Assembly (NCBI RefSeq): GCF_006345805.1
Contig: NW_021827189.1
Coordinates: 1 to 11,007 of the forward strand
From: Octopus sinensis
Lineage: Eukaryota
DNA: 11,007 nucleotides
Direction: 5' to 3'
Shown: one piece after another, positions 9-11,007 of the stretch
How positions within the stretch are numbered: position 1 is the first letter of the stretch
Layout: each line of letters opens with the position of its first letter
The notes under the pieces: generated by a model
Databases searched by the model: none
The model's input: the letters and a program-made list of their open reading frames with translations, nothing else
Told to the model about the DNA's origin: nothing
Position numbers and translations under genes: made by a program

Positions 9-314
9 TTTTTGCCAAATAAACACATGCAGTATATATTCGTTCTTCATTCGTTATTACTGTTCTTATTCTAATAAATGTCCATGTCCGGAAACTTTTC
101 ACACATCTGTGACCTCTTCAGCGCCACTTTTTGTTTTCGTGAGTGCTCTTGCTGGAATAAGCAGAGCAAGAGAACACACAAAGACGGAAAGTGTTGCCGA
201 GTAGGTCACAGATGTGTGAAGAAAGATTTCCGGACAATGGACATGAATTAGAATAAGAACAGTAATAATAGAGTGAAGAACGAATAAATAGTGCGTGTGT
301 TTATTTGGCAAAAA
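9..314. repeat. Long imperfect fold-back (inverted repeat) element, ~305 nt hairpin
   Basis: Arm 9-115 (TTTTTGCCAAATAAACAC...CACACATCTGTGACCT) is the reverse complement of arm 203-314 (AGGTCACAGATGTGTG...GTGTTTATTTGGCAAAAA) with scattered mismatches and indels. The inner part also pairs (CACTTT/AAAGTG, CTCTTGCT/AGCAAGAG), leaving a ~10-nt loop near 150-162. Confidence 0.9.
88..125 (-). ncRNA. Decayed hammerhead-like motif inside the fold-back arm
   Basis: The minus strand reads CTGAAGA-GGT-CAC-agat-GTG-T-GAAA-AGTTT. The CUGANGA and GAAA boxes are perfect and flank a 3-bp stem II, but I find no convincing stem I. The mirror copy (~197-232, +) has a more degraded core (CCGAGTA...GAAG). Confidence 0.3.
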
Positions 315-1306: not shown

Positions 1307-1869
1307 GTCGTGCTATACTTGTCTGTAGTTTAAGTCACTTATGTCTTATTTTCATATAACTGCCGCTCTATTTAATTTATAAATAGCTATCTCGCAAATG
1401 AAGTGTCTAAAAATGTTTGTTGATGCATTCCTTGGTTGTTCTATATATCACAGTTAATTTGTGTTGTGGTTTATCTGTACATAAGCTCTCACATTCTATT
1501 ATTCTGAGATCTGCTAACTATTTTTATCCATATGTCCTTTAGTTTCTTCTCATTCAATTGTTCTTGAAGGTCTCCTCGTTATTATCATATCACTGTCTGA
1601 TTTGTCAAGCTGGGAAGAGTTACGCAAGGATAACTTGTTTGTTAGGGAGTCTTTATTTATCCTGGTCAAATACGACACAATTCAGCAAAACAGGATATGA
1701 GCCCGTTATTGACAGTATGAAGAGAACAATGCACGAGTGAAATTACTCAATTGGAAGTTATATACAGATATCAAATTCCATCACATGTTAGAGACTAGCA
1801 GCTTCATATTTTAAATGCTTATACTCTACACTATGAAATGAGTAATTTATATCGTTTATGAAACAAAGA

Positions 1870-2077
1870 TGTACATATATATTCATACATACGTACATGC
1901 ATTACGTATATATATATATATATATATGCATACATACATACATGTGCACACACACATACACACATACATATACATATGTGTATTTGTGTGCATATATATT
2001 CATGCATGTGTATATATGTATGTATATGTATATATAAGAGTTATTTATATACACGTGTGTGTATGTATGCACGTATA
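1870..2077. repeat. Compound (TA)/(CA)/(TACA)/(TG) microsatellite
   Basis: Read directly from the sequence. Confidence 0.95.
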
Positions 2078-2403
2078 ACCACGAATATATTATGAATATC
2101 TTCCTATATATCTGTGATTGTATGTATGTGTATATCTAAACACACAGACACAGAGGCACTCACACATGTATATACATATAAGAGAACAAATAATAAAAAG
2201 TGAGAGAAGGCGAGAGAAAGAGAGAAATAAAGGGATGGAGAAAGGGAAGTCAGGTGAAAAATTGTATTACCAACAGAGAAGGTTAAAACTAAAGGAATAG
2301 CAGAAAATGGAATTTGAGAAATGAAATTGTATTTCAGGCAATATAGTCTCAAATAAATAAATAAATAAAAAACTAGTAAAAACATCAAAATTGCAAATTA
2401 AAA

Positions 2404-2445
<42 letters not shown>

Positions 2446-2603
2446 CACCACCGCTACTACTAGTGTTTCTGCTACTACTACCACCACCATCACCTCTACC
2501 ACCACCATCACTACCACCACTACCATCACCACCGCCACCACCACTATACCTACTACTACCACCACCACCACCACTACTACTACTACTACTAATGATGATA
2601 ACA

Positions 2604-2660
<57 letters not shown>

Positions 2661-2712
2661 GTAATCGCAACAATAACAACATCAATAACAATAATAATAG
2701 TAATAATGTAAT
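2404..2712. repeat. Compound trinucleotide microsatellite: (CTA/CCA)n then (AAT)n
   Basis: TACTACTAC/CACCACCAC from 2404 to 2590, then AATAATAAT from 2591 to 2712. It explains the poly-L/P/I/V 'ORFs'. Confidence 0.97.
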
Positions 2713-2865
2713 AAAATTTAACATTAACTGAAATTCTTTGAAAAACAAGGAACAGTCATTGAAAATGAACGCAATAGGAATGTTGTACGTTTATTAGTAT
2801 GTGTGGTTTTGTCTTGTTTTTATGCTTCTATTTTTTTTTTGTTTTTTCATTGCTTATTCTAGGAT

Positions 2866-2884
2866 GGGGGCCGGGCGGGGTGGG
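2866..2884 (+). other. Canonical G-quadruplex-forming motif containing a GC box
   Basis: GGGGG-CC-GGG-C-GGGG-T-GGG: four G-tracts of at least 3 nt with 1-2 nt loops, including GGGCGG. Confidence 0.7.
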
Positions 2885-3085
2885 ACGATGTATTCAACAT
2901 GTTACACACCAAGGAACTAGATTCTTCGTTTTGCTTTATTATTATTTTTTTGGTACTATTTATTTACCATTTTATTATTTGTGTGTGTGTGTGTATGCGT
3001 GTGTGTGTGTGTTGGTGTCTAAGACTGTAATTGAATCCAAGATCAATATTTAAAGTTAATAATGAAAAATTTGACAACTTCTATA

Positions 3086-3128
3086 ATATATATATACATA
3101 TATATATATATATATGCATGTGTGTATT

Positions 3129-3211
<83 letters not shown>

Positions 3212-3227
3212 CGCATATATATAATAC

Positions 3228-3263
<36 letters not shown>

Positions 3264-3320
3264 AATACGTATATATTATATATATATAATTATATATATG
3301 TATATATATATATATATTGT
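3086..3320. repeat. (TA)n-(GA)n-(TA)n microsatellite
   Basis: Read directly; (GA)n at ~3180-3208. Confidence 0.97.
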
Positions 3321-3521
3321 ATATATGCAGGTATGTCTGCAAGCGTACATATATTGGAAGAAATGTTGCTTGTAATGGTTGTTCATTTATTTTACTTAGC
3401 TTCATTTATAATATTTTTTCTTGTGTTCTTTTGTTATTTTCAATAAATTTTATTTACAATGTAAAAAGTAAAGTAAAAAGTAAAAAAAAAATAATAACCT
3501 CCCCCGTTCATATTCTTGTCC

Positions 3522-3692
<171 letters not shown>

Positions 3693-3775
3693 TTCCATGA
3701 AAATAAAATAGAAAATAATTGATGCTTGGTTTTTATTTGTTGCATATAAAAATGGCGGTTATGCATATTATCTCT

Positions 3776-3866
3776 GTATATATATACATATATATATACA
3801 TATGTGCGTGCGTATCTGTGTGTGGTAAATATGCATATATATGTATATATATGTATATATATATAA

Positions 3867-3928
<62 letters not shown>

Positions 3929-3945
3929 TATATATATATGTATGT
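3776..3945. repeat. (TA)n-rich microsatellite
   Basis: Read directly from the sequence. Confidence 0.95.
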
Positions 3946-4258
3946 ATTATGCCTATTTCAGTAATATAATTTTCAATACGTATATGCGCGAGAGTAAGTG
4001 TATATAGAAAAGGAATGCAACGGAAGCAAGAATTAGAAAAAAGCATCACCAAAATAGGTAGAGCAGTCATTGCTGTTTATATTTTCTCCTGGTTTCTATT
4101 TTTGGGACTGTATTTTGGTTTATTTTTTAGGGTGAATATTTAGGTTTTCTATTTTATGTTCTAAATACAAATTTTATTAAAATTTATAAATAAGCTTTAT
4201 TTTCAATAAGGCAGTATGCATGCTTACATGCATATTTACATACCATGCAAACACACGC

Positions 4259-4273
4259 ACATACACACACACA

Positions 4274-4311
<38 letters not shown>

Positions 4312-4480
4312 CATATATATATATATATAACATGTATATATAATATATATTATATATATATATATACATGTATGTATGAATATGGACATATATTTATACA
4401 TACATATATACTTATACATAGATATGCATCAATATCTATTCATATACAAGCATGTATATAATTACATATATTTCTGAGCA

Positions 4481-4514
<34 letters not shown>

Positions 4515-4528
4515 CATGTCTATATACT

Positions 4529-4586
<58 letters not shown>

Positions 4587-4600
4587 CGTTATACATATGC
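4259..4600. repeat. Compound (CA)/(TA)/(TATC) microsatellite
   Basis: Read directly; (TATC)n at ~4482-4514. Confidence 0.93.
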
Positions 4601-4885
4601 ATATACATACATACAGGTTTATGAATATATTCATAAATACACATATGCAAGCGTGTATTTAATTATATATATTTTTGAGCATATGCATAATTGTAGTGTG
4701 TGTGTGTCTATATATCTATGTGTGTGGTGTACATATCGCTTCAGGCATTCGTACCGCAAGACCTCCTCCGTTCGGGTATCTGGGAAATGCCGGAGTTCGT
4801 CATAGCCTCTTCAGCACGCCCTTGTATCACAACCTCTGACCAGTACGGCTCCTCCTGCCTTGATGCAGTTCAACTTAACAAAAAA

Positions 4886-4915
4886 TATATATATGTATAT
4901 ATATATATATATATC

Positions 4916-4980
<65 letters not shown>
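4886..4980. repeat. (TA)n microsatellite
   Basis: Read directly from the sequence. Confidence 0.95.
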
Positions 4981-4982
<2 letters not shown>

Positions 4983-5269
4983 ACGTCTCGGCTTGATAGC
5001 CCTTATCGTTTGGTTTTACTGTTATTCTCCTAGCCCTGTCTTTTACTGTTTTTATTTGTATTGTTTTTACTGTTTTGTTCTTGTTACCACTTTTATCCCC
5101 CCGCAAAAAAAAACCGATATATGCATGTGGGACCTCCACGCTAATTGGTCCATCGCAGTGCAGAACCTGTACATCAGGAAAGCGATCCTGCTATCTGAAA
5201 TACAATATGGAGCGTAAATGACGAAGTTAAACTCATATCAGGATCTTGATTAGTTTGATGTATGGAGCC

Positions 5270-5876
5270 ATGCAATCCGTGGCGTAGAGGAAGAAAGGGG
5301 ACATGCTGCACTGCACGCCTTTATCTTCCTGCTGCAGGCAATGTCATAGCAGCTCCAAAGACGCTTCTCTCGAAGGCTAAAAGCCTTTGTGGTAGACTGT
5401 ATTCACCTCTCTCTTGGTACCTGGACTGGAAGCCCAAAGAGGCATTCTGGTGTGGGTACGATTCCAGCTGTCTTACTCACCATCCAAGGTGTTTTGTTCA
5501 GAGAAGTGTGAATCCCTGTGGCGATTGAGTGAATGTGACAGTAGTAGGTGTAAGAAACTGGAAGCTGGTAGCAAGAGCTCCAGCACAGAAGAGGCTCGCT
5601 CCCGATGGTCGCAATCAGTGCTGAACCCTGTGAGACAGCAGGCTGAGGCGGTGGATCGAGTGTGCGGGCAGCCGTTGTCCGGGAGCACAACCTGAAGGGG
5701 AATTCCTGCCCCCACGAAAAGATGAGGTACAGAAAGCGTGCTCAGAGCAGCAGCTGGCTGATTCACGGCAGCCACCGTATCTTCAGTTCAGCTGTAGAAA
5801 TTTTAAGTAAATGAAGATAACTATAACAACGTGGAATGAACACACACTGCTTGACGGAGAGTCCATACCCGAGCGG
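5270..5876 (+). mobile_element. 5' end (putative 5' UTR plus ORF start) of an RTE-clade non-LTR retrotransposon, 3'-truncated by a microsatellite
   Basis: A GC-rich ~550-nt block leads directly into the endonuclease-like start at 5811. The 5' boundary is approximate, and assigning the block as UTR is inference from its position. Confidence 0.6.
5811..5876 (+). pseudogene. N-terminal fragment of an RTE LINE apurinic-type endonuclease
   Basis: ATG at 5811 gives MKITITTWNEHTLLDGESIPER, which matches the RTE/BovB-type start motif (L)TIATWNVRTLLD...RPER. Similarity stops just before the CA/TA repeat. Confidence 0.75.
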
Positions 5877-5894
5877 TTGCGGTACGGTGTAAGT

Positions 5895-5980
5895 GTATAT
5901 GCATACATGCAAATCTGCACATACATATACACATACACACACATACACATAATACATACATACATACACACACACACATA
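5895..5980. repeat. (CA)/(TACA) microsatellite
   Basis: Read directly from the sequence. Confidence 0.9.
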
Positions 5981-6126
5981 TTGATATTTCGTTTTTGGAT
6001 TGAAAAGGTTGCAGGACGCAAGGAAAATTTTAGAAAAATAAAAAAAGAATTAAGTGGAAATTTTTCTGGTGAGTATGTTAAATTATAAAGCACCAAAAGA
6101 GAATGACAATCCCCAGACACAACAGC

Positions 6127-6185
<59 letters not shown>

Positions 6186-6250
6186 TAGATAGATAGATAG
6201 ATAGATAAGAACACATATGTATATATATATATATATAATATATATATATA
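6127..6250. repeat. (GATA)n followed by (TA)n, the left flank of the ribozyme array
   Basis: (GATA)n at 6127-6207 and (TA)n at ~6221-6250. Confidence 0.97.
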
Positions 6251-6403
6251 CCAATTAAGGACTGAACACGAAAAGTGGACAGTCAACATGCTAGATATAG
6301 ACGTCAAATCGCCATTCACCACAAAAGATTATGTTCTCAGATCAAACTCAACACAAAACCATAGCAATAAACAAGTGAAAAATATGCGAAATAAAATAAT
6401 TAC

Positions 6404-6467
6404 CCATGTACTAATTAGTTTCAGCTGTTATTTTCCGCAAGGAAAACTGCAGCCATCATCAGCATGG
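6404..6467 (-). ncRNA. Type I hammerhead ribozyme, copy 1 (predicted cleavage between 6409 and 6408)
   Basis: Minus strand: CCATG-CTGATGA-T-GGCTG-cag-TTTTCC-ttgc-GGAAAA-taa-CAGCT-GAAA-CTAATTAG-TA/CATGG. P1 is CCAUG/CAUGG, CUGAUGA and GAAA are perfect, P2 is GGCUG/CAGCU plus a 6-bp distal helix, P3 is the palindrome ACUAAUUAGU, and the triplet is GUA. Confidence 0.92.
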
Positions 6468-6906
6468 TCCGTTATAAATGTAATTTGCTGGACTAGATGC
6501 AAACACGATACCGAAATATCGCGTGCATGGAGTTCAGCCTATTACATTTGAATATATCTTTCAAATGCCTTTACTTTGGCGCGTTGAAACCCGAGAAAAC
6601 TAGCCTGCAGCTAATAATTAGCAGCAGTTAATTTATCGGTTAGAGACGATTTATTTATATAAAATTAATTAAGGTAGAAATTGATATTTATCAATTAAGA
6701 CCAGTGGTCTAGCATATTAAAAAAGAATCCGAAGATTAAAATATTTATATATACCAATTAAGGACTGAACACGAAAAGTGGACAGTCAACATGCTAGATA
6801 TAGACGTCAATCGCCATTCATCACAAAAGAGATTATGTTCTCAGATCAAACTCAACACAAAACCATAGAATAAACAAGTGAAAAATATACGAAATAAAAT
6901 AATTAC

Positions 6907-6970
6907 CCATGTACTAATTAGTTTCAGCTGTTATTTTCCGCAAGGAAAACTGCAGCCATCATCAGCATGG
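6907..6970 (-). ncRNA. Type I hammerhead ribozyme, copy 2 (predicted cleavage between 6912 and 6911)
   Basis: Same sequence as copy 1, shifted by 503 nt. Confidence 0.92.
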
Positions 6971-7409
6971 TCCGTTATAAATGTAATTTGCTGGACTAGA
7001 TGCAAACACGATACCGAATATCGCGTGCATGGAGTTCAGCCTATTACATTTGAATATATCTTATGCCTTTACTTTACTTTGGCGCGTTGAAACCCGAGAA
7101 AACTAGCCTGCAGCTAATATTAGCAGCAGTTAATTCATCGGTTAGAGAACCATATTTATTTATATAAAATTAATTAAGGGTAGAAATGATATTTATCAAT
7201 TAAGACCAGTGGTCTAGCATATTAAAAAAGAATCCGAAGATTAAAATATTTATATACTACCAATTAAGGACTGAACACGAAAAGTGGACAGTCAACATGC
7301 TAGATATAGACGTCAAATCGCCATTCACCATAAAAGATTATGTTCTCAGATCAAATCAACACAAACCATAGCAATAAACAAGTGAAAAAATATACAATAA
7401 AATAATTAC

Positions 7410-7472
7410 CCATGTACTAATTAGTTTCAGCTGTATTTTCCGCAAGGAAAACTGCAGCCATCATCAGCATGG
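7410..7472 (-). ncRNA. Type I hammerhead ribozyme, copy 3 (predicted cleavage between 7415 and 7414)
   Basis: Same core and helices, with a 1-nt deletion only in the P2 internal loop (CTGTA versus CTGTTA on the + strand). Confidence 0.9.
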
Positions 7473-7695
7473 TCCGTTATAAATGTAATTTGCTGGACTA
7501 GATGCAAACACGATACCGAAATATCGCGTGCATGGAGTTCAGCCTATTACATTTGAATATATCTTTCAAATGCCTTTACTTTGGCGCGTTGAAAGGCATT
7601 TGAAAGATATATTCAAATGTAATAGGCTGAACTCCATGCACGCGATATTTCGGTATCGTGTTTGCATCTAGTCAGCAAATTACATTTATAACGGA

Positions 7696-7758
7696 CCATG
7701 CTGATGAGGCTGCAGTTTTCCTTGCGGAAAATAACAGCTGAAACTAATTAGTACATGG
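7696..7758 (+). ncRNA. Type I hammerhead ribozyme, inverted copy (predicted cleavage after 7753)
   Basis: CCATG-CTGATGA-GGCTG-cagTTTTCCttgcGGAAAAtaa-CAGCT-GAAA-CTAATTAG-TA/CATGG. This is a fully canonical core without the extra U seen after A9 in copies 1-3. Confidence 0.93.
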
Positions 7759-8032
7759 GTAATTATTTTATTTCGTATATTTTTCACTTGTTTATTGCTA
7801 TGGTTTTGTGTTGAGTTTGATCTGAGAACATAATCTTTTGTGGTGAATGGCGATTTGACGTCTATATCTAGCATGTTGACTGTCCACTTTTCGTGTTCAG
7901 TCCTTAATTGGTATATATAAATATTTTAATCTTCGGATTCTTTTTTAATATGCTAGACCACTGGTCTTAATTGATAAATATCAATTTCTACCCTTAATTA
8001 ATTATATATATATATATATATATATGTATGTA

Positions 8033-8855
8033 CAGCAGTCCACAAGGTTGCTCATATTATCGGAGAAAAATGTTTTCGGAAGGTCGCTCAACCATTTAGG
8101 CACCGCTTCTTGCACTTTTTCGTGTAGTAAATCGACAACTTTTCTGAAGGGTGTTTGAGCGGTCCGGGGATGTGATAGTTGGAAGGGACGAAAACTTGAC
8201 AGTATGCAGAGTGTTTCGGCAACACGAAATACAATTTTTCAATGGTTTCAATTTTGTAGGCGGCCGTATGCGGGCGTGCATTGTCGTGCAAGAATAGTAC
8301 TTACTTTGAACATAGACCTCTCCGTTTGATGGAAATTGCTGGTTTCACTTTGTTGGTCATCATTTCACTCTAGCTTACATTGGTTTCAGTATAGGCTCTT
8401 CTGTGATCCAAAAACAACGGTTAGTACCACCTTTTCTGCTGAAGGTAGTCTTAAATTTCTTGTCTGCAGGCGATTCCATGTATTTCCACTACATACACTA
8501 CCTTTTGAAGGCTGGCTCAAAATGATTCACTCAGGACTCATCTCCTGTGTCTATATCTTCATCGATATAACGGTTGAGTAAGATCTCTTGGTATCTTGGT
8601 ATCTTGGTATCTTGCACAGACCTTACGGAAGCGAAATTTGTTACAGATGATTTCTTATACATAGCTATGACTAATTTGCAGAGAACATCTCACCTCATCG
8701 ATGGACACTCATCAGTTCTCCACAACCATCGAGCTTGTTCAAATTTCATGTCAGTTTGATGGGCATAATGATCCCTATTCATGCTTCACCCTTGTTGGGC
8801 ACTTTTTAAAATTCTCGATGTATGTGTTAGAGTGTTGTATCCGTATTGTACTGAA
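8033..8855 (-). pseudogene. Degenerate mariner-type (DD34D-like) transposase
   Basis: Minus-strand fragments, with stops and frameshifts: SVQYG...YIENFKK; SIDEV...LQISHSY*EII...RKVCAR; TGDES*VNHFEP (TGDE at 8537-8548); WKYMESP..KKFKT/PSAEKVVLTV; LHDNARPHTAA; PSNYHIPGPLK; VQEAVPKWLSDLPKTFFSD...LVD. Both ends of the element are missing. Confidence 0.92.
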
Positions 8856-8869
8856 GGCCTGCGGGGAAT

Positions 8870-9387
8870 ATTAGCTCCTAACACACGCTCCGGAATATGG
8901 CGCATACGTTCTTCACTGCGACATTGGGAAAGTCTTCGAACACTTCCTTGATCTTGGACACCAAATCGGCTTTGGTGTCGCAGGCAGCGCGGTTAGTGTA
9001 TTTATCTGAAGGTATGGCAAGGAGCAAAATCCTTCTGCCACACATGTTCTCCCAGTAACAAGCCTCCCCAGAAAGGATTTGACCTTAATCTCTGGTATAT
9101 TTGCATAATCACCTGAATTAAGTGTAAGACCCTGCTAAATGGCGTGCGTCGCCATGACATCAACCTCGCTAGAGACACACCCAGGATCAATACAGTTTGG
9201 CCTTCATGACCTAAGATCAATGCAGTTTGGTCTTCATGATGTCGCTTTTTATAGAGATGTGACATGTGCGTCTTAAGAGAAGTTCACAGAGTATTGATCA
9301 GCAGTCATCATATTGGCATTTTGATAACCAGCGCAAAACATCATCATGAACTCTTTCCCAATGTTTTGATGACTTCTAGTCCTCCAT
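8870..9387 (-). pseudogene. Internally deleted second Tc1/mariner-superfamily transposase, probably DD37D (maT)-like
   Basis: Minus strand: putative ATG at 9387; GCVSSEVDVMATH..QGLTLNS (compare GCVSSEGDVMPPH..GLRLNS); HVWQKDFAPCHT (compare YVWQQDSAPCHT); then directly DKYTNRAACDTKADLVSKIKEVFEDFP..VKNVCAIFRS. The third-Asp segment is deleted, so the D-D spacing cannot be counted, and the subfamily call rests on motif resemblance. Confidence 0.75.
9180..9239. repeat. 30-bp tandem duplication within the second transposase relic
   Basis: CCCAGGATCAATACAGTTTGGCCTTCATGA followed by CCTAAGATCAATGCAGTTTGGTCTTCATGA. Confidence 0.85.
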
Positions 9388-9509
9388 GTCGACTAACTTT
9401 TTCTTAATTACAATTTTAATCTTAATATTCACTAATGCCTTTCATTGTTGACCAATATATGAAACTTTTCTTGAAAAAAATTATAAAAACTCATCAAATT
9501 TAATATAGA

Positions 9510-9543
9510 TGTACATATATACATGTATATGAATATGTATACA

Positions 9544-9576
<33 letters not shown>

Positions 9577-9660
9577 GAATATGTATATGATATATACATC
9601 ATACATACATACATACATCGTGTATGCATACATACACACATACATACGTACATATATATG
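9510..9660. repeat. (TA)/(CATA) microsatellite
   Basis: Read directly from the sequence. Confidence 0.93.
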
Positions 9661-9661
9661 A

Positions 9662-9886
9662 CGAACTAACTGTTAACTTTCTCAGATGCAGCACGGATTT
9701 TTGTCGGTGAACAGGTCGCGGATTTTAGCGACGAAAATATTTTGACAAATGACTTAAATGTTGAAGTGAATCGAACGGCTTTTGTGTGTTTCTAAATGGC
9801 TTACAAACACCTTCCACGCTGCAATTGTTTTCGTTTCAGCACACGATCTCAGATTAAATTACTTGCTATGCGAGTACATCTCCGTA

Positions 9887-9887
<1 letters not shown>
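9662..9887 (+). mobile_element. Short microsatellite-flanked element carrying a variant hammerhead (possible solo pLTR or non-autonomous PLE derivative)
   Basis: A ~225-bp non-microsatellite block between two TA-rich tracts, with the HHR-like fold at 9700-9749 and a ~140-nt tail ending at (TA)n. Confidence 0.55.
9700..9749 (+). ncRNA. Minimal type I hammerhead with a covariant G3-C8 core (GUGAACA); predicted cleavage after 9742
   Basis: TTTGTCG-GTGAACA-G-GTCGC-ggatttta-GCGAC-GAAA-ATATT-T/TGACAAA. P1 is 7 bp (one G-U), P2 is a perfect 5 bp closed by G10.1-C11.1, P3 is the palindrome AAUAUU, and the triplet is UUU. Confidence 0.65.
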
Positions 9888-9927
<40 letters not shown>

Positions 9928-9983
9928 TATAATATATATATCTATTGAGTGTGTTGTGTGTGTAAGTATGTATGTATGTATAT
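9888..9983. repeat. (TA)n then (TG)/(TATG) microsatellite
   Basis: Read directly from the sequence. Confidence 0.93.
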
Positions 9984-10185
9984 ACGGTACATCTTGAAAC
10001 AGATAAATAAATAACACCGTGTAAATATTGGGTTGAAGAACCCTTTGGACTGAGGCAGTCCATGTCCCACGTGATGCCTTCCACTCTTTCTAGGCAAAAG
10101 GTTTTTCGGCGTTATATATTTCCATGTTATTATTTATAGCTTTATTTATTTCAAGATCAACCGTTCCAAAAAAAAAAAGAATTAT

Positions 10186-10300
10186 CTATGTATGTATGTA
10201 TGTACACACATCTATATATATGTGTGTGTATAGATATTTGTGTGTATGTGTGTGTATGTGTGTGTGCATGTGTGGTGTGTGTGTGTGTGTGTGCATATAT
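10186..10300. repeat. (TATG)/(TG)n microsatellite
   Basis: Read directly from the sequence. Confidence 0.93.
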
Positions 10301-10575
10301 ACTGACAAATAATATATTCGTTGCTCTAAAACTAACTGATCCGGGCTTGTATTTGTGTTTTCACCTCGATAAATATTTCACCCAAGTCTTATATTCCTCG
10401 GGATACGTTGTACTTCACAAATATGTGCAAAGACTTCATATACGTAACCCTATAATCAACTCTTTCGAAATTTGTTGAGTTCTGTGGAGCTATTTGAAAC
10501 CTTGGGGAAGAATCAACTTATCCATATCTAAAACAGACTCACAGTTCAACTTGACTAGCTCTCGTCCTGGCCATA

Positions 10576-10836
10576 ATGGAGAACGTGGCTTAGTGGTTAA
10601 GGGTGGTGGACTCAGGATTGTAAAGTTCTGGCTTTGGTTCCTGGACCGGGTGACACATTGTGTTCTTGAGCAAAACTCCATTTCACGTTGCTCCAGTCCG
10701 CTCAGCAGCCAAAAATGAGTAATCTTGCGGCGGACCGGCGTCCCGTTCAGGCAGGGACTATAAACTCCATCGAAACCGAGAAACCGAACCTTATGAGTCG
10801 GTATGATTCGAGAATGTAAAATTACCTTACCTTTCT
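10576..10836 (+). mobile_element. tRNA-derived SINE with a CORE-like central domain and an 11-bp TSD
   Basis: A-box TGGCTTAGTGG at 10586-10596 and a degraded B-box region GGCTTTGGTTCC at ~10630-10641. The central GTGTTCTTGAGCAAAACTCCATTTCAC...CTCAGC...AAAAATGAGTA resembles the CORE domain. The direct repeat TCCTGGCCATA lies at 10565-10575 and 10837-10847. Confidence 0.85.
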
Positions 10837-11007
10837 TCCTGGCCATATATCTGTTTGTTGCTCGTTATTACCGGAAGAATCTTACATTTTGTGCATTCAT
10901 TTAGACATTGCTGACGGCCACTTTCTCGCGAATACCGATCATTGCGAAGATAATCTGGTACTTGACTGAGGAAAGAAACTTCGAATGACCCGTCCTTATT
11001 TCTTTCT

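What the first reader, a model, noticed from the sequence alone, without database searches (positions are those of the whole stretch)
6251..7594. 503-nt tandem unit with an intact type I hammerhead in every copy: candidate retrozyme-like circular RNA replicon
Seen in sequence: three minus-strand HHRs with perfect CUGAUGA/GAAA cores, GUA triplets and paired P1/P2/P3. Predicted cuts at 7415/7414, 6912/6911 and 6409/6408 release two monomers of exactly 503 nt, and the unit encodes no recognisable protein. Established: animal non-LTR retrozymes, newt satellite 2 and Penelope-like pLTRs are tandem repeats with type I HHRs, and retrozyme monomers accumulate as linear and circular RNAs. Inference: this is a young non-autonomous ribozyme retroelement. 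Its monomer seems longer than the few-hundred-nt animal retrozymes I recall, and it may be an undescribed family.
Basis: partly seen in the sequence, partly recalled or inferred. Interest (0 to 1): 0.92.

Follow-up and report, generated by a model that had tools for sequence, protein, structure and literature searches.

The report
Hammerhead-ribozyme tandem retroelement (retrozyme)
This is a short non-coding tandem repeat in which every 503-base copy carries a self-cleaving hammerhead RNA motif; it is a new example of the already described animal "retrozyme" mobile elements, and its layout matches insertions made by Penelope-like retrotransposons.

Summary
Window 6234-7594 is 2.7 head-to-tail copies of a 503-nt unit. 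The motif is not chance: 0 hits in 3000 shuffles with my own descriptor.

- The element continues past 7594 as a 423-nt inverted, 5'-truncated arm (7595-8017) with a fourth HHR on the plus strand.
- Helix II starts with a G.U wobble, plus an unpaired U after A9 in three of the four copies.
- Helix III is a weak 3-bp stem but a perfect 10-nt palindrome. The lone motif prefers an inactive fold, while two copies fold into a double hammerhead.
- No Rfam hammerhead model matches.

These HHR traits, the tandem-plus-inverted layout and the (TA)n flanks are signatures of Penelope-like elements. GC is 33%, there is no sense-strand ORF, and the circular fold is stable (z = -6.6).

Best reading: a non-LTR retrozyme, probably mobilised by Penelope-like machinery. 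The 503-nt size is not unusual (published range 51-972 bp; the cricket pDo500 satellite is about 500 bp). No other copies, transcripts or source organism could be reached. New member of a known kind; moderate to low interest.

The parts
6220..6250 (.). Left (TA)n run that the array abuts; presumed half of the target microsatellite
   Evidence: TA runs at 6220-6237 and 6239-6250. The unit sequence merges into the run at GGTATATATA (alignment), so the boundary is uncertain between 6234 and 6251.
6234..6408 (-). 3'-terminal partial unit of the tandem array (sense positions 1-175, counted from the cleavage site)
   Evidence: blastn 95.5% identity to monomer positions 329-503; alignment.
6409..6911 (-). 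Full unit A, 503 nt from cut to cut
   Evidence: GC 33%. Circular fold -134.1 kcal/mol, z = -6.6 against 100 dinucleotide shuffles.
6912..7414 (-). Full unit B, 503 nt from cut to cut; the most diverged copy
   Evidence: 18 alignment columns differ from the majority sequence. Circular fold z = -4.35.
7415..7594 (-). 5'-truncated first unit of the tandem array (sense positions 323-503)
   Evidence: blastn 99.4% identity to monomer positions 1-181.
6404..6467 (-). HHR copy 1: CCAUG/CUGAUGA/U/helix II (33 nt)/GAAA/ACUAAUUAGU/A17, then CAUGG; cut at 6409/6408
6907..6970 (-). HHR copy 2, identical to copy 1; cut at 6912/6911
7410..7472 (-). HHR copy 3; one A missing from the internal loop of helix II; cut at 7415/7414
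7592..7594 (.). Head-to-head junction between the tandem array and the inverted arm, with a 3-nt AAA overlap
   Evidence: The plus-strand and minus-strand blastn alignments overlap at 7592-7594; sequence GTTGAAAGGCATTTG.
7595..8017 (+). Inverted, 5'-truncated arm (sense positions 340-503, then 1-263)
   Evidence: blastn minus-strand matches at 7592-7753 and 7754-8017. 96.7% identical to the adjacent partner and 98.5% to the leftmost register.
7696..7758 (+). HHR copy 4 on the plus strand; lacks the extra U after A9; cut at 7753/7754
8003..8024 (.). Right (TA)n run that the inverted arm abuts
   Evidence: The arm leaves the unit sequence at CTTAATTAATT|ATATAT.

Best explanation
The locus is one insertion of a non-autonomous, non-coding retroelement of the animal non-LTR retrozyme kind. 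Its hammerhead is of the Penelope-like (PLE) style.

Proposed mechanism, for the family rather than necessarily this copy:
1. The minus strand is transcribed across tandem units.
2. Neighbouring HHRs pair through their palindromic helix III (ACUAAUUAGU) into a double hammerhead.
3. Each cuts after GUA (A17), releasing 503-nt linear RNAs.
4. A host RNA ligase closes them into stable, highly base-paired circles.
5. A PLE reverse transcriptase/GIY-YIG endonuclease copies the circle, or a multimer, into a (TA)n microsatellite.

At this locus, copying primed on the left target end ran about 2.7 times round the unit. A second cDNA, primed on the right target end, gave the inverted 5'-truncated arm. 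The two met head to head at 7592-7594.

Shown here: the sequence anatomy, the statistical non-randomness of the motif, the predicted folds, and the absence of coding capacity. Inferred from published work on retrozymes and PLEs: transcription, cleavage, circularisation, and who mobilises the element.
For: HHR motif and array:
- Four HHR motifs pass a strict descriptor; 0 hits in 3000 shuffles of the window.
- Cut-to-cut spacing equals the repeat period, 503 nt, twice.

Folding:
- The isolated motif prefers an alternative fold (-21.4 to -21.9 kcal/mol) over the HHR fold (-15.4 to -15.7).
- The lowest-energy dimer of the 80-nt minus-strand motif is the double hammerhead: a 10-bp intermolecular helix III, both helices I intermolecular, -48.6 kcal/mol. 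Published metazoan type I HHRs with a short palindromic helix III behave the same way (PMC4209133; PMC7229834).

PLE-type HHR traits present (PMC4209133):
- An unpaired nucleotide between A9 and 10.1.
- A long helix II.
- A 5-bp helix I.
- Palindromic 15.2-16.2 and loop 3.

Retrozyme traits present:
- GC 33% (published below 45-50%).
- No LTRs.
- No sense-strand ORF of 40 codons or more.
- No Pfam match for the unit's ORFs.
- Stable circular fold, z = -6.6 and -4.35.

Insertion architecture:
- Partial tandem copies plus an adjacent inverted 5'-truncated copy, with (TA)n on both sides. This is how PLE insertions are described (PMC8557442).
- Both outer ends fall in TA-rich stretches of the unit.
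Against: - No Rfam hammerhead family matches, even at E<=10 on a 111-nt stretch.
- The 10.1-11.1 pair is G.U, whereas G-C is highly conserved in canonical and PLE HHRs. With the extra U the base of helix II could also be read as U.U.
- The monomer's lowest-energy fold sequesters CUGAU.
- All four motifs are near-identical copies, so there is no covariation and only one independent occurrence.
- No other genomic copy, transcript or circle could be examined.
- No RT or GIY-YIG remnant was found in the flanks that were scanned in six frames.
- (TA)n runs of six or more units cover about 4.5% of this window, so TA flanks are only mildly improbable by chance.
- Unit B is more diverged than the other copies, which a single rolling-circle event does not predict.
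Confidence: 0.8

Rival explanations
1. A local tandem duplication (small satellite) that carries a hammerhead-like relic which is no longer, or never was, catalytically competent. The array grew by unequal crossing-over or replication slippage, not by reverse transcription.
For: - No Rfam HHR hit.
- G.U/U.U at the base of helix II, and a more stable competing fold.
- Only 2.7 units; no other copies found.
- Unequal divergence of the units.
- Local amplification by unequal crossover is discussed for retrozyme arrays.
Against: - The motif passes a strict descriptor that never hits in 3000 shuffles, and the dimer fold is the double hammerhead.
- Slippage or crossing-over does not explain the adjacent inverted 5'-truncated arm, nor both outer ends lying in (TA)n.
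- The axolotl HHR_Amex2, with a U.U mismatch at the base of helix II, still self-cleaves as a dimer (PMC7229834).
Confidence: 0.12
2. The copies are pseudo-LTR fragments of an autonomous Penelope-like element (a heavily 5'-truncated PLE insertion), not a separate non-autonomous family.
For: - PLE-style HHR traits.
- PLE insertions are often 5'-truncated, partially tandem and partly inverted, and favour microsatellites.
- Retrozymes are reported to be close relatives of pLTRs.
Against: - The repeat period is 503 nt and equals the cut-to-cut distance. A truncated PLE in partial tandem would repeat with the period of the whole element (about 3-4 kb).
- No RT or GIY-YIG signal in the unit's ORFs or the scanned flanks.
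Confidence: 0.06
3. The inverted arm (7595-8017) is an assembly artefact, a fold-back chimeric long read, and only the direct array is real.
For: A long inverted repeat of about 420 bp with a loop of about 15 nt is a shape that chimeric long reads produce. Many differences between copies are 1-nt indels, which could mean weak polishing.
Against: - The arm does not mirror everything to its left. It stops after 423 nt at a (TA)n run and unique sequence follows.
- It differs from its adjacent partner at 13 places (96.7%) and is closer to the leftmost register (98.5%).
- This arrangement is a described feature of PLE-type insertions.
Confidence: 0.1

Closest known systems
Metazoan non-LTR retrozymes (Cervera and de la Pena 2020, PMC7229834; Li, Clavereau and Pollet 2026 preprint, 10.64898/2026.07.22.740005)
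   Same: - Tandem units, each with a type I HHR.
- Low GC (33%).
- No LTR, PBS or PPT, and no coding capacity.
- Monomer defined by the HHR cuts.
- Stable predicted circular fold.
- Weak helix III that calls for dimeric action.
[quoted passage not shown]
   Different: - The unit (503 nt) is above the 170-400 nt first described, though inside the 51-972 bp range now reported.
- Helix II is unusually long (33 nt, with an internal loop) and begins with G.U.
- Expression, circles and copy number are unknown here.
Hammerheads of Penelope-like elements (Cervera and de la Pena 2014, PMC4209133) and PLE insertion architecture (Craig et al. 2021, PMC8557442)
   Same: - Unpaired nucleotide between A9 and 10.1.
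- Long helix II and 5-bp helix I.
- Palindromic helix III.
- Insertion made of partial tandem copies plus an adjacent inverted 5'-truncated copy, in a (TA)n microsatellite.
   Different: - No RT/GIY-YIG ORF in or near the unit.
- The period is 503 nt rather than a 3-4 kb element.
- G10.1-C11.1 is replaced by G.U.
- A real 3-bp helix III with a tetraloop is present, unlike the minimal PLE HHRs.
pDo500 satellite of Dolichopoda cave crickets (PMC2837043)
   Same: Tandem repeat of about 500 bp (463-505 bp) with one type I HHR per unit. Both single and double hammerhead modes have been proposed for it.
   Different: The HHR sequence is unrelated (supplement). The pDo500 HHR is a compact 49-nt motif. 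pDo500 forms a large satellite (about 5% of the genome), whereas this is a 2.7-unit insertion.
Newt/axolotl satellite 2 retrozymes (HHR_Amex1 and HHR_Amex2, PMC7229834)
   Same: Weak helix III with a palindromic tetraloop. Poor activity as a monomer and good activity as a dimer. Amex2 has a mismatch (U.U) at the base of helix II.
   Different: Units are 330-350 nt with a short helix II. They come from a vertebrate host with about 10^5 copies.

Membership tests
Hammerhead ribozyme, type I | Conserved core: C3 U4 G5 A6 N7 G8 A9 ... G12 A13 A14 ... A15.1-U16.1, and N17 not G | tested here: met
   CUGAUGA, GAAA, A15.1-U16.1 and A17 are present in all four copies.
Hammerhead ribozyme, type I | Three helices around the core, with helix I open and helices II and III closed by loops | tested here: met
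   Helix I is 5 bp (CCAUG/CAUGG). Helix II is 5 bp, an internal loop, 6-7 bp and a UUGC loop. Helix III is 3 bp with an AAUU loop. The strict descriptor gave 0 hits in 3000 shuffles.
Hammerhead ribozyme, type I | G10.1-C11.1 pair at the base of helix II | tested here: not met
   The pair is G.U, with an extra unpaired U after A9 in three copies. Published precedents: an unpaired nucleotide at this place and a U.U mismatch in an active axolotl HHR.
Hammerhead ribozyme, type I | Match to a curated covariance model (Rfam Hammerhead_1, _3, _II, HH9, HH10) | tested here: not met
   No hit at gathering score, nor at E<=10 on 3.7 kb or 111 nt. My inference, not tested: the 33-nt helix II and the 9/10.1 insertion cost too much score.
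Hammerhead ribozyme, type I | Site-specific self-cleavage | not testable with these tools
   Needs in vitro transcription of monomer and dimer constructs.
Metazoan non-LTR retrozyme | Tandem repeat with a complete type I HHR in at least two consecutive units | tested here: met
   Three consecutive minus-strand HHRs, 503 nt apart. The criterion is given.
Metazoan non-LTR retrozyme | Short, AT-rich, non-coding unit without LTR, PBS or PPT | tested here: met
   503 nt, GC 33%. No sense-strand ORF of 40 codons or more. No Pfam hit for the ORFs. PBS and PPT motifs were not searched for specifically.
Metazoan non-LTR retrozyme | Dispersed multiple copies in the genome | not testable with these tools
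   No eukaryotic genome collection was available. Indirect routes found nothing.
Metazoan non-LTR retrozyme | Accumulation as linear and circular monomer RNA | not testable with these tools
   No transcriptome access. Only the predicted stable circular fold is available.
Penelope-like element (autonomous) | ORF with a PLE reverse transcriptase and a GIY-YIG endonuclease between pseudo-LTRs | tested here: not met
   No Pfam family in the unit's ORFs. None in six-frame translations of 1-1830 and 4980-5900, in the minus frames of 8020-9500, or in all frames of 9650-11007. The microsatellite-rich stretches 1831-4979 and 5901-6233 and the plus frames of 8020-9500 were not scanned.
PLE-type hammerhead | Unpaired nucleotide between 9 and 10.1, long helix II, short helix I, palindromic 15.2-16.2 and loop 3 | tested here: met
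   Read from the sequence against the description in PMC4209133. The extra U is absent from the plus-strand copy.

The most novel reading that the evidence does not exclude
The locus is the fossil of one Penelope-type integration of a circular (or multimeric) retrozyme RNA. A rolling-circle cDNA of 2.7 units was primed in a (TA)n target on one side. A second, twin-primed inverted cDNA of 0.85 unit was primed on the other side. The two joined head to head with 3 nt of microhomology. If the same layout recurs at other copies, it would be direct structural evidence, in an invertebrate, that retrozymes are moved by PLE machinery from circular templates. It would also define an HHR variant with a G.U 10.1-11.1 pair and an extended helix II with an internal loop.
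Probability: 0.35. Interest if true: 0.5.

Novelty: new member of a known kind. Interest (0 to 1): 0.35.

Why it matters
Retrozymes are one of the few known sources of abundant ribozyme-made circular RNAs in animals, and how they move is still not settled. This locus adds no new principle. It does show, in one place, an HHR with Penelope-style traits together with an insertion layout typical of Penelope-like elements: tandem copies plus an inverted truncated copy in a (TA)n run. That agrees with the recent proposal that animal retrozymes are non-autonomous passengers of Penelope-like elements. The proposal was made for vertebrates and left open for other animals. The G.U base of helix II and the long helix II also show why curated hammerhead models miss such elements in genome scans.

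Tried and rejected
- Rfam at three settings found no hammerhead. The sub-threshold miRNA hits at 7521-7648 are only the fold-back junction hairpin.
- Other copies through proteins: the 87-aa ORF of the unit has no homologue and is not on record.
- Other copies through DNA patterns. Metagenome contigs gave 7 hits, all without helices I and III and unrelated, so chance. Viral contigs gave 0. Prokaryotic genomes gave 0.
- Source organism: look-ups and searches with a SINE-like ORF and the transposase-like relic returned nothing. The organism stays unknown. By composition (GC 34%, dense microsatellites) it looks like an invertebrate animal, but that is only an impression.
- Linkage to a Penelope RT/GIY-YIG: six-frame Pfam scans of the scanned flanks were empty. 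Translating whole frames through the tool failed because of stop codons.
- Same family as cricket pDo500: rejected, the HHR sequences are unrelated.
- Chance motif: rejected.
- Viroid-like or two-polarity RNA replicon: rejected. My descriptor and CUGAUGA search find HHR motifs in only one polarity of the unit, and Rfam finds no ribozyme on either strand.
- Simple fold-back read artefact: unlikely.

Full report
**What is in the sequence.** A blastn of the cut-to-cut monomer (6409-6911) against the window shows two full units, 6409-6911 and 6912-7414 (94% identity, 5 mismatches, 15 gap openings). A partial unit lies on each side, 6234-6408 and 7415-7594. Beyond 7594 there are two reverse-strand matches, 7592-7753 and 7754-8017 (spacing 503). 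So the element has 2.7 direct units followed by a 423-nt inverted arm. TRF did not report the array because its longest period here is 500.

**The hammerheads.** CUGAUGA occurs on the minus strand at 6462-6456, 6965-6959 and 7467-7461, and on the plus strand at 7701-7707 inside the inverted arm. The motif reads as follows:
- 5'-CCAUG (helix I)
- CUGAUGA
- an extra U in the three minus-strand copies
- GGCUG-CAG-UUUUCC-UUGC-GGAAAA-UAA-CAGCU (helix II, 33 nt)
- GAAA
- ACU-AAUU-AGU (helix III)
- A17, the cut, then CAUGG (helix I)

Helix I is open, which makes this type I. I wrote a descriptor requiring helix I of at least 5 bp, helix II of at least 4 bp, helix III of at least 3 bp, N17 not G, and an optional one-base insert after A9. 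It finds exactly these four motifs, with N17 at 6409, 6912, 7415 (minus strand) and 7753 (plus strand). It finds nothing in 3000 dinucleotide-preserving shuffles of the window; a looser version gives 23 hits in 3000. The four motifs are copies of one ancestor, so this is one independent occurrence and no covariation can be assessed.

**Weak points of the motif.**
- No Rfam hammerhead family matches, at gathering score or at E<=10 on 3.7 kb or 111 nt.
- The first pair of helix II is G.U rather than the highly conserved G-C.
- Three copies have an unpaired U between A9 and G10.1.
- Helix III has only 3 bp.
- For the isolated motif the predicted lowest-energy fold is not the hammerhead. CUGAU pairs with AUUAG, giving -21.4 to -21.9 kcal/mol against -15.4 to -15.7 for the hammerhead fold.

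Helix III plus its loop (ACUAAUUAGU) is, however, a perfect 10-nt palindrome. When two 80-nt copies of the minus-strand motif are folded together, the lowest-energy structure is the classical double hammerhead. It has a 10-bp intermolecular helix III and both helices I intermolecular, at -48.6 kcal/mol.

This is the published behaviour of most metazoan type I HHRs: a short helix III with a palindromic loop, little activity alone, and activity as dimers in tandem transcripts (PMC4209133; PMC7229834). The unpaired nucleotide between 9 and 10.1, the long helix II, the 4-5-bp helix I and the palindromic 15.2-16.2 and loop 3 are the traits listed for the hammerheads of Penelope-like elements. A U.U mismatch at the base of helix II is reported in the axolotl HHR_Amex2, which still cleaves as a dimer. 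The motif therefore departs from the canonical HHR in ways that have precedents, apart from the G.U pair.

**The rest of the unit.**
- GC is 33%.
- The HHR strand has no stop-free stretch of 40 codons or more.
- The antisense ORFs (87, 70 and 62 aa) have no Pfam family. The 87-aa ORF, the only one searched, has no homologue among 5.8 billion predicted proteins.
- Folded as a circle, the sense monomer gives -134.1 kcal/mol with z = -6.6 for unit A and z = -4.35 for unit B. The antisense strand gives z = -5.65.
- My descriptor finds HHR motifs in only one polarity of the unit, and Rfam finds no ribozyme on either strand.

These are the properties described for animal non-LTR retrozymes. [quoted passage not shown]

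**How it got there.** In the sense orientation the tandem array starts 5'-truncated at 7594 (unit position 323) and ends at about 6234 (position about 175). The inverted arm starts 5'-truncated at 7595 (position 340) and ends at about 8017 (position about 263). Both 3' ends therefore point outwards. Each stops in a TA-rich stretch of the unit and runs into a (TA)n tract, 6220-6250 on the left and 8003-8024 on the right. The two 5' ends meet head to head with a 3-nt AAA overlap.

PLE insertions are described as highly 5'-truncated partial tandems, often with an inverted 5'-truncated copy immediately adjacent, and with a bias for microsatellites including (TA)n (PMC8557442). I read the locus as one such integration from a circular or multimeric template. 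One cDNA was primed on each target end, and the left one ran 2.7 times round the unit. This is inference.

Three caveats apply:
- (TA)n runs cover about 4.5% of this window, so the TA flanks are only mildly improbable by chance.
- Unit B differs from the majority sequence at 18 alignment columns, against 1-6 for the other pieces. A single event does not predict that.
- No RT or GIY-YIG remnant is present in the scanned flanks.

A fold-back assembly artefact is unlikely. The arm ends after 423 nt in different flanking sequence, and it differs from its adjacent partner at 13 positions while being closer to the leftmost register.

**Comparison with what is known.** Animal retrozymes were first described with units of 170-400 nt and tandem repeats of 150-450 bp. 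A 2026 survey reports consensus lengths of 51-972 bp and argues that retrozymes derive from PLE pseudo-LTRs. The cave-cricket pDo500 satellite is a 463-505-bp tandem repeat with one HHR per unit, but its HHR sequence is unrelated to this one. The 503-nt size is therefore not a novelty. Whether this particular family has been catalogued cannot be decided without a eukaryotic repeat library.

**What could not be done.** No other copy, transcript or circle could be examined, and the source organism was not identified. Self-cleavage, circularisation, copy number and the identity of the mobilising element remain inferred.

**Verdict.** This is a new member of a known kind. The PLE-style hammerhead and PLE-style insertion layout are the one mildly informative feature. 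Interest 0.35.

Noticed in passing
window 9-314: A near-perfect fold-back of about 306 nt. Arms: 9-52/271-314 (91%), 54-85/237-268 (94%), 85-100/221-236, 98-153/165-220 (80%). It looks like a MITE-like or hairpin-RNA locus.
   Followed up: partly
window 8030-8700, minus strand: The broken reading frames contain ...VLFLHDNARPHTAAYK..., which I recognise from memory as a mariner-type transposase motif. There are many stops and frameshifts. Pfam finds nothing in any frame and the protein search was empty, so this stays unconfirmed.
   Followed up: partly
window 7521-7648: Sub-threshold Rfam matches to miRNA precursor families (mir-2941, MIR949) on both strands. They only reflect the perfect hairpin at the head-to-head junction of the array. 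A plus-strand read-through transcript would form a hairpin of about 420 bp, a possible small-RNA source.
   Followed up: no
window 10560-10830: A stretch that looks by eye like a tRNA-derived SINE. ARAGORN finds no tRNA and the overlapping 118-aa ORF has no homologue.
   Followed up: partly
window 1830-5000, 5900-6250, 9500-10300: Very dense microsatellites: (TA)n, (TAC/CAC)n, (TAA)n, (TAT)n, (ATAG)n, (CA)n. The (TAC/CAC)n-(TAA)n block at 2404-2707 and the (TAT)n block at 3522-3690 are mutually inverted, with arms 78-87% complementary.
   Followed up: no
window 8586-8614; ~9186-9240; ~1249-1308: Three small direct repeats: (TCTTGGTA)x3.6 inside the transposase-like relic; two 25-nt copies of GATCAATRCAGTTTGGYCTTCATGA; two copies of about 27 nt of TCATGAGGTWRTAATTTGGTTCGTTA.
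   Followed up: no
window 6409-7414: Units A and B are both exactly 503 nt although they differ by 15 gap openings that cancel out. Most differences between copies are single-base indels. This could reflect real mutation, a heterogeneous template, or weak polishing of the assembly.
   Followed up: partly
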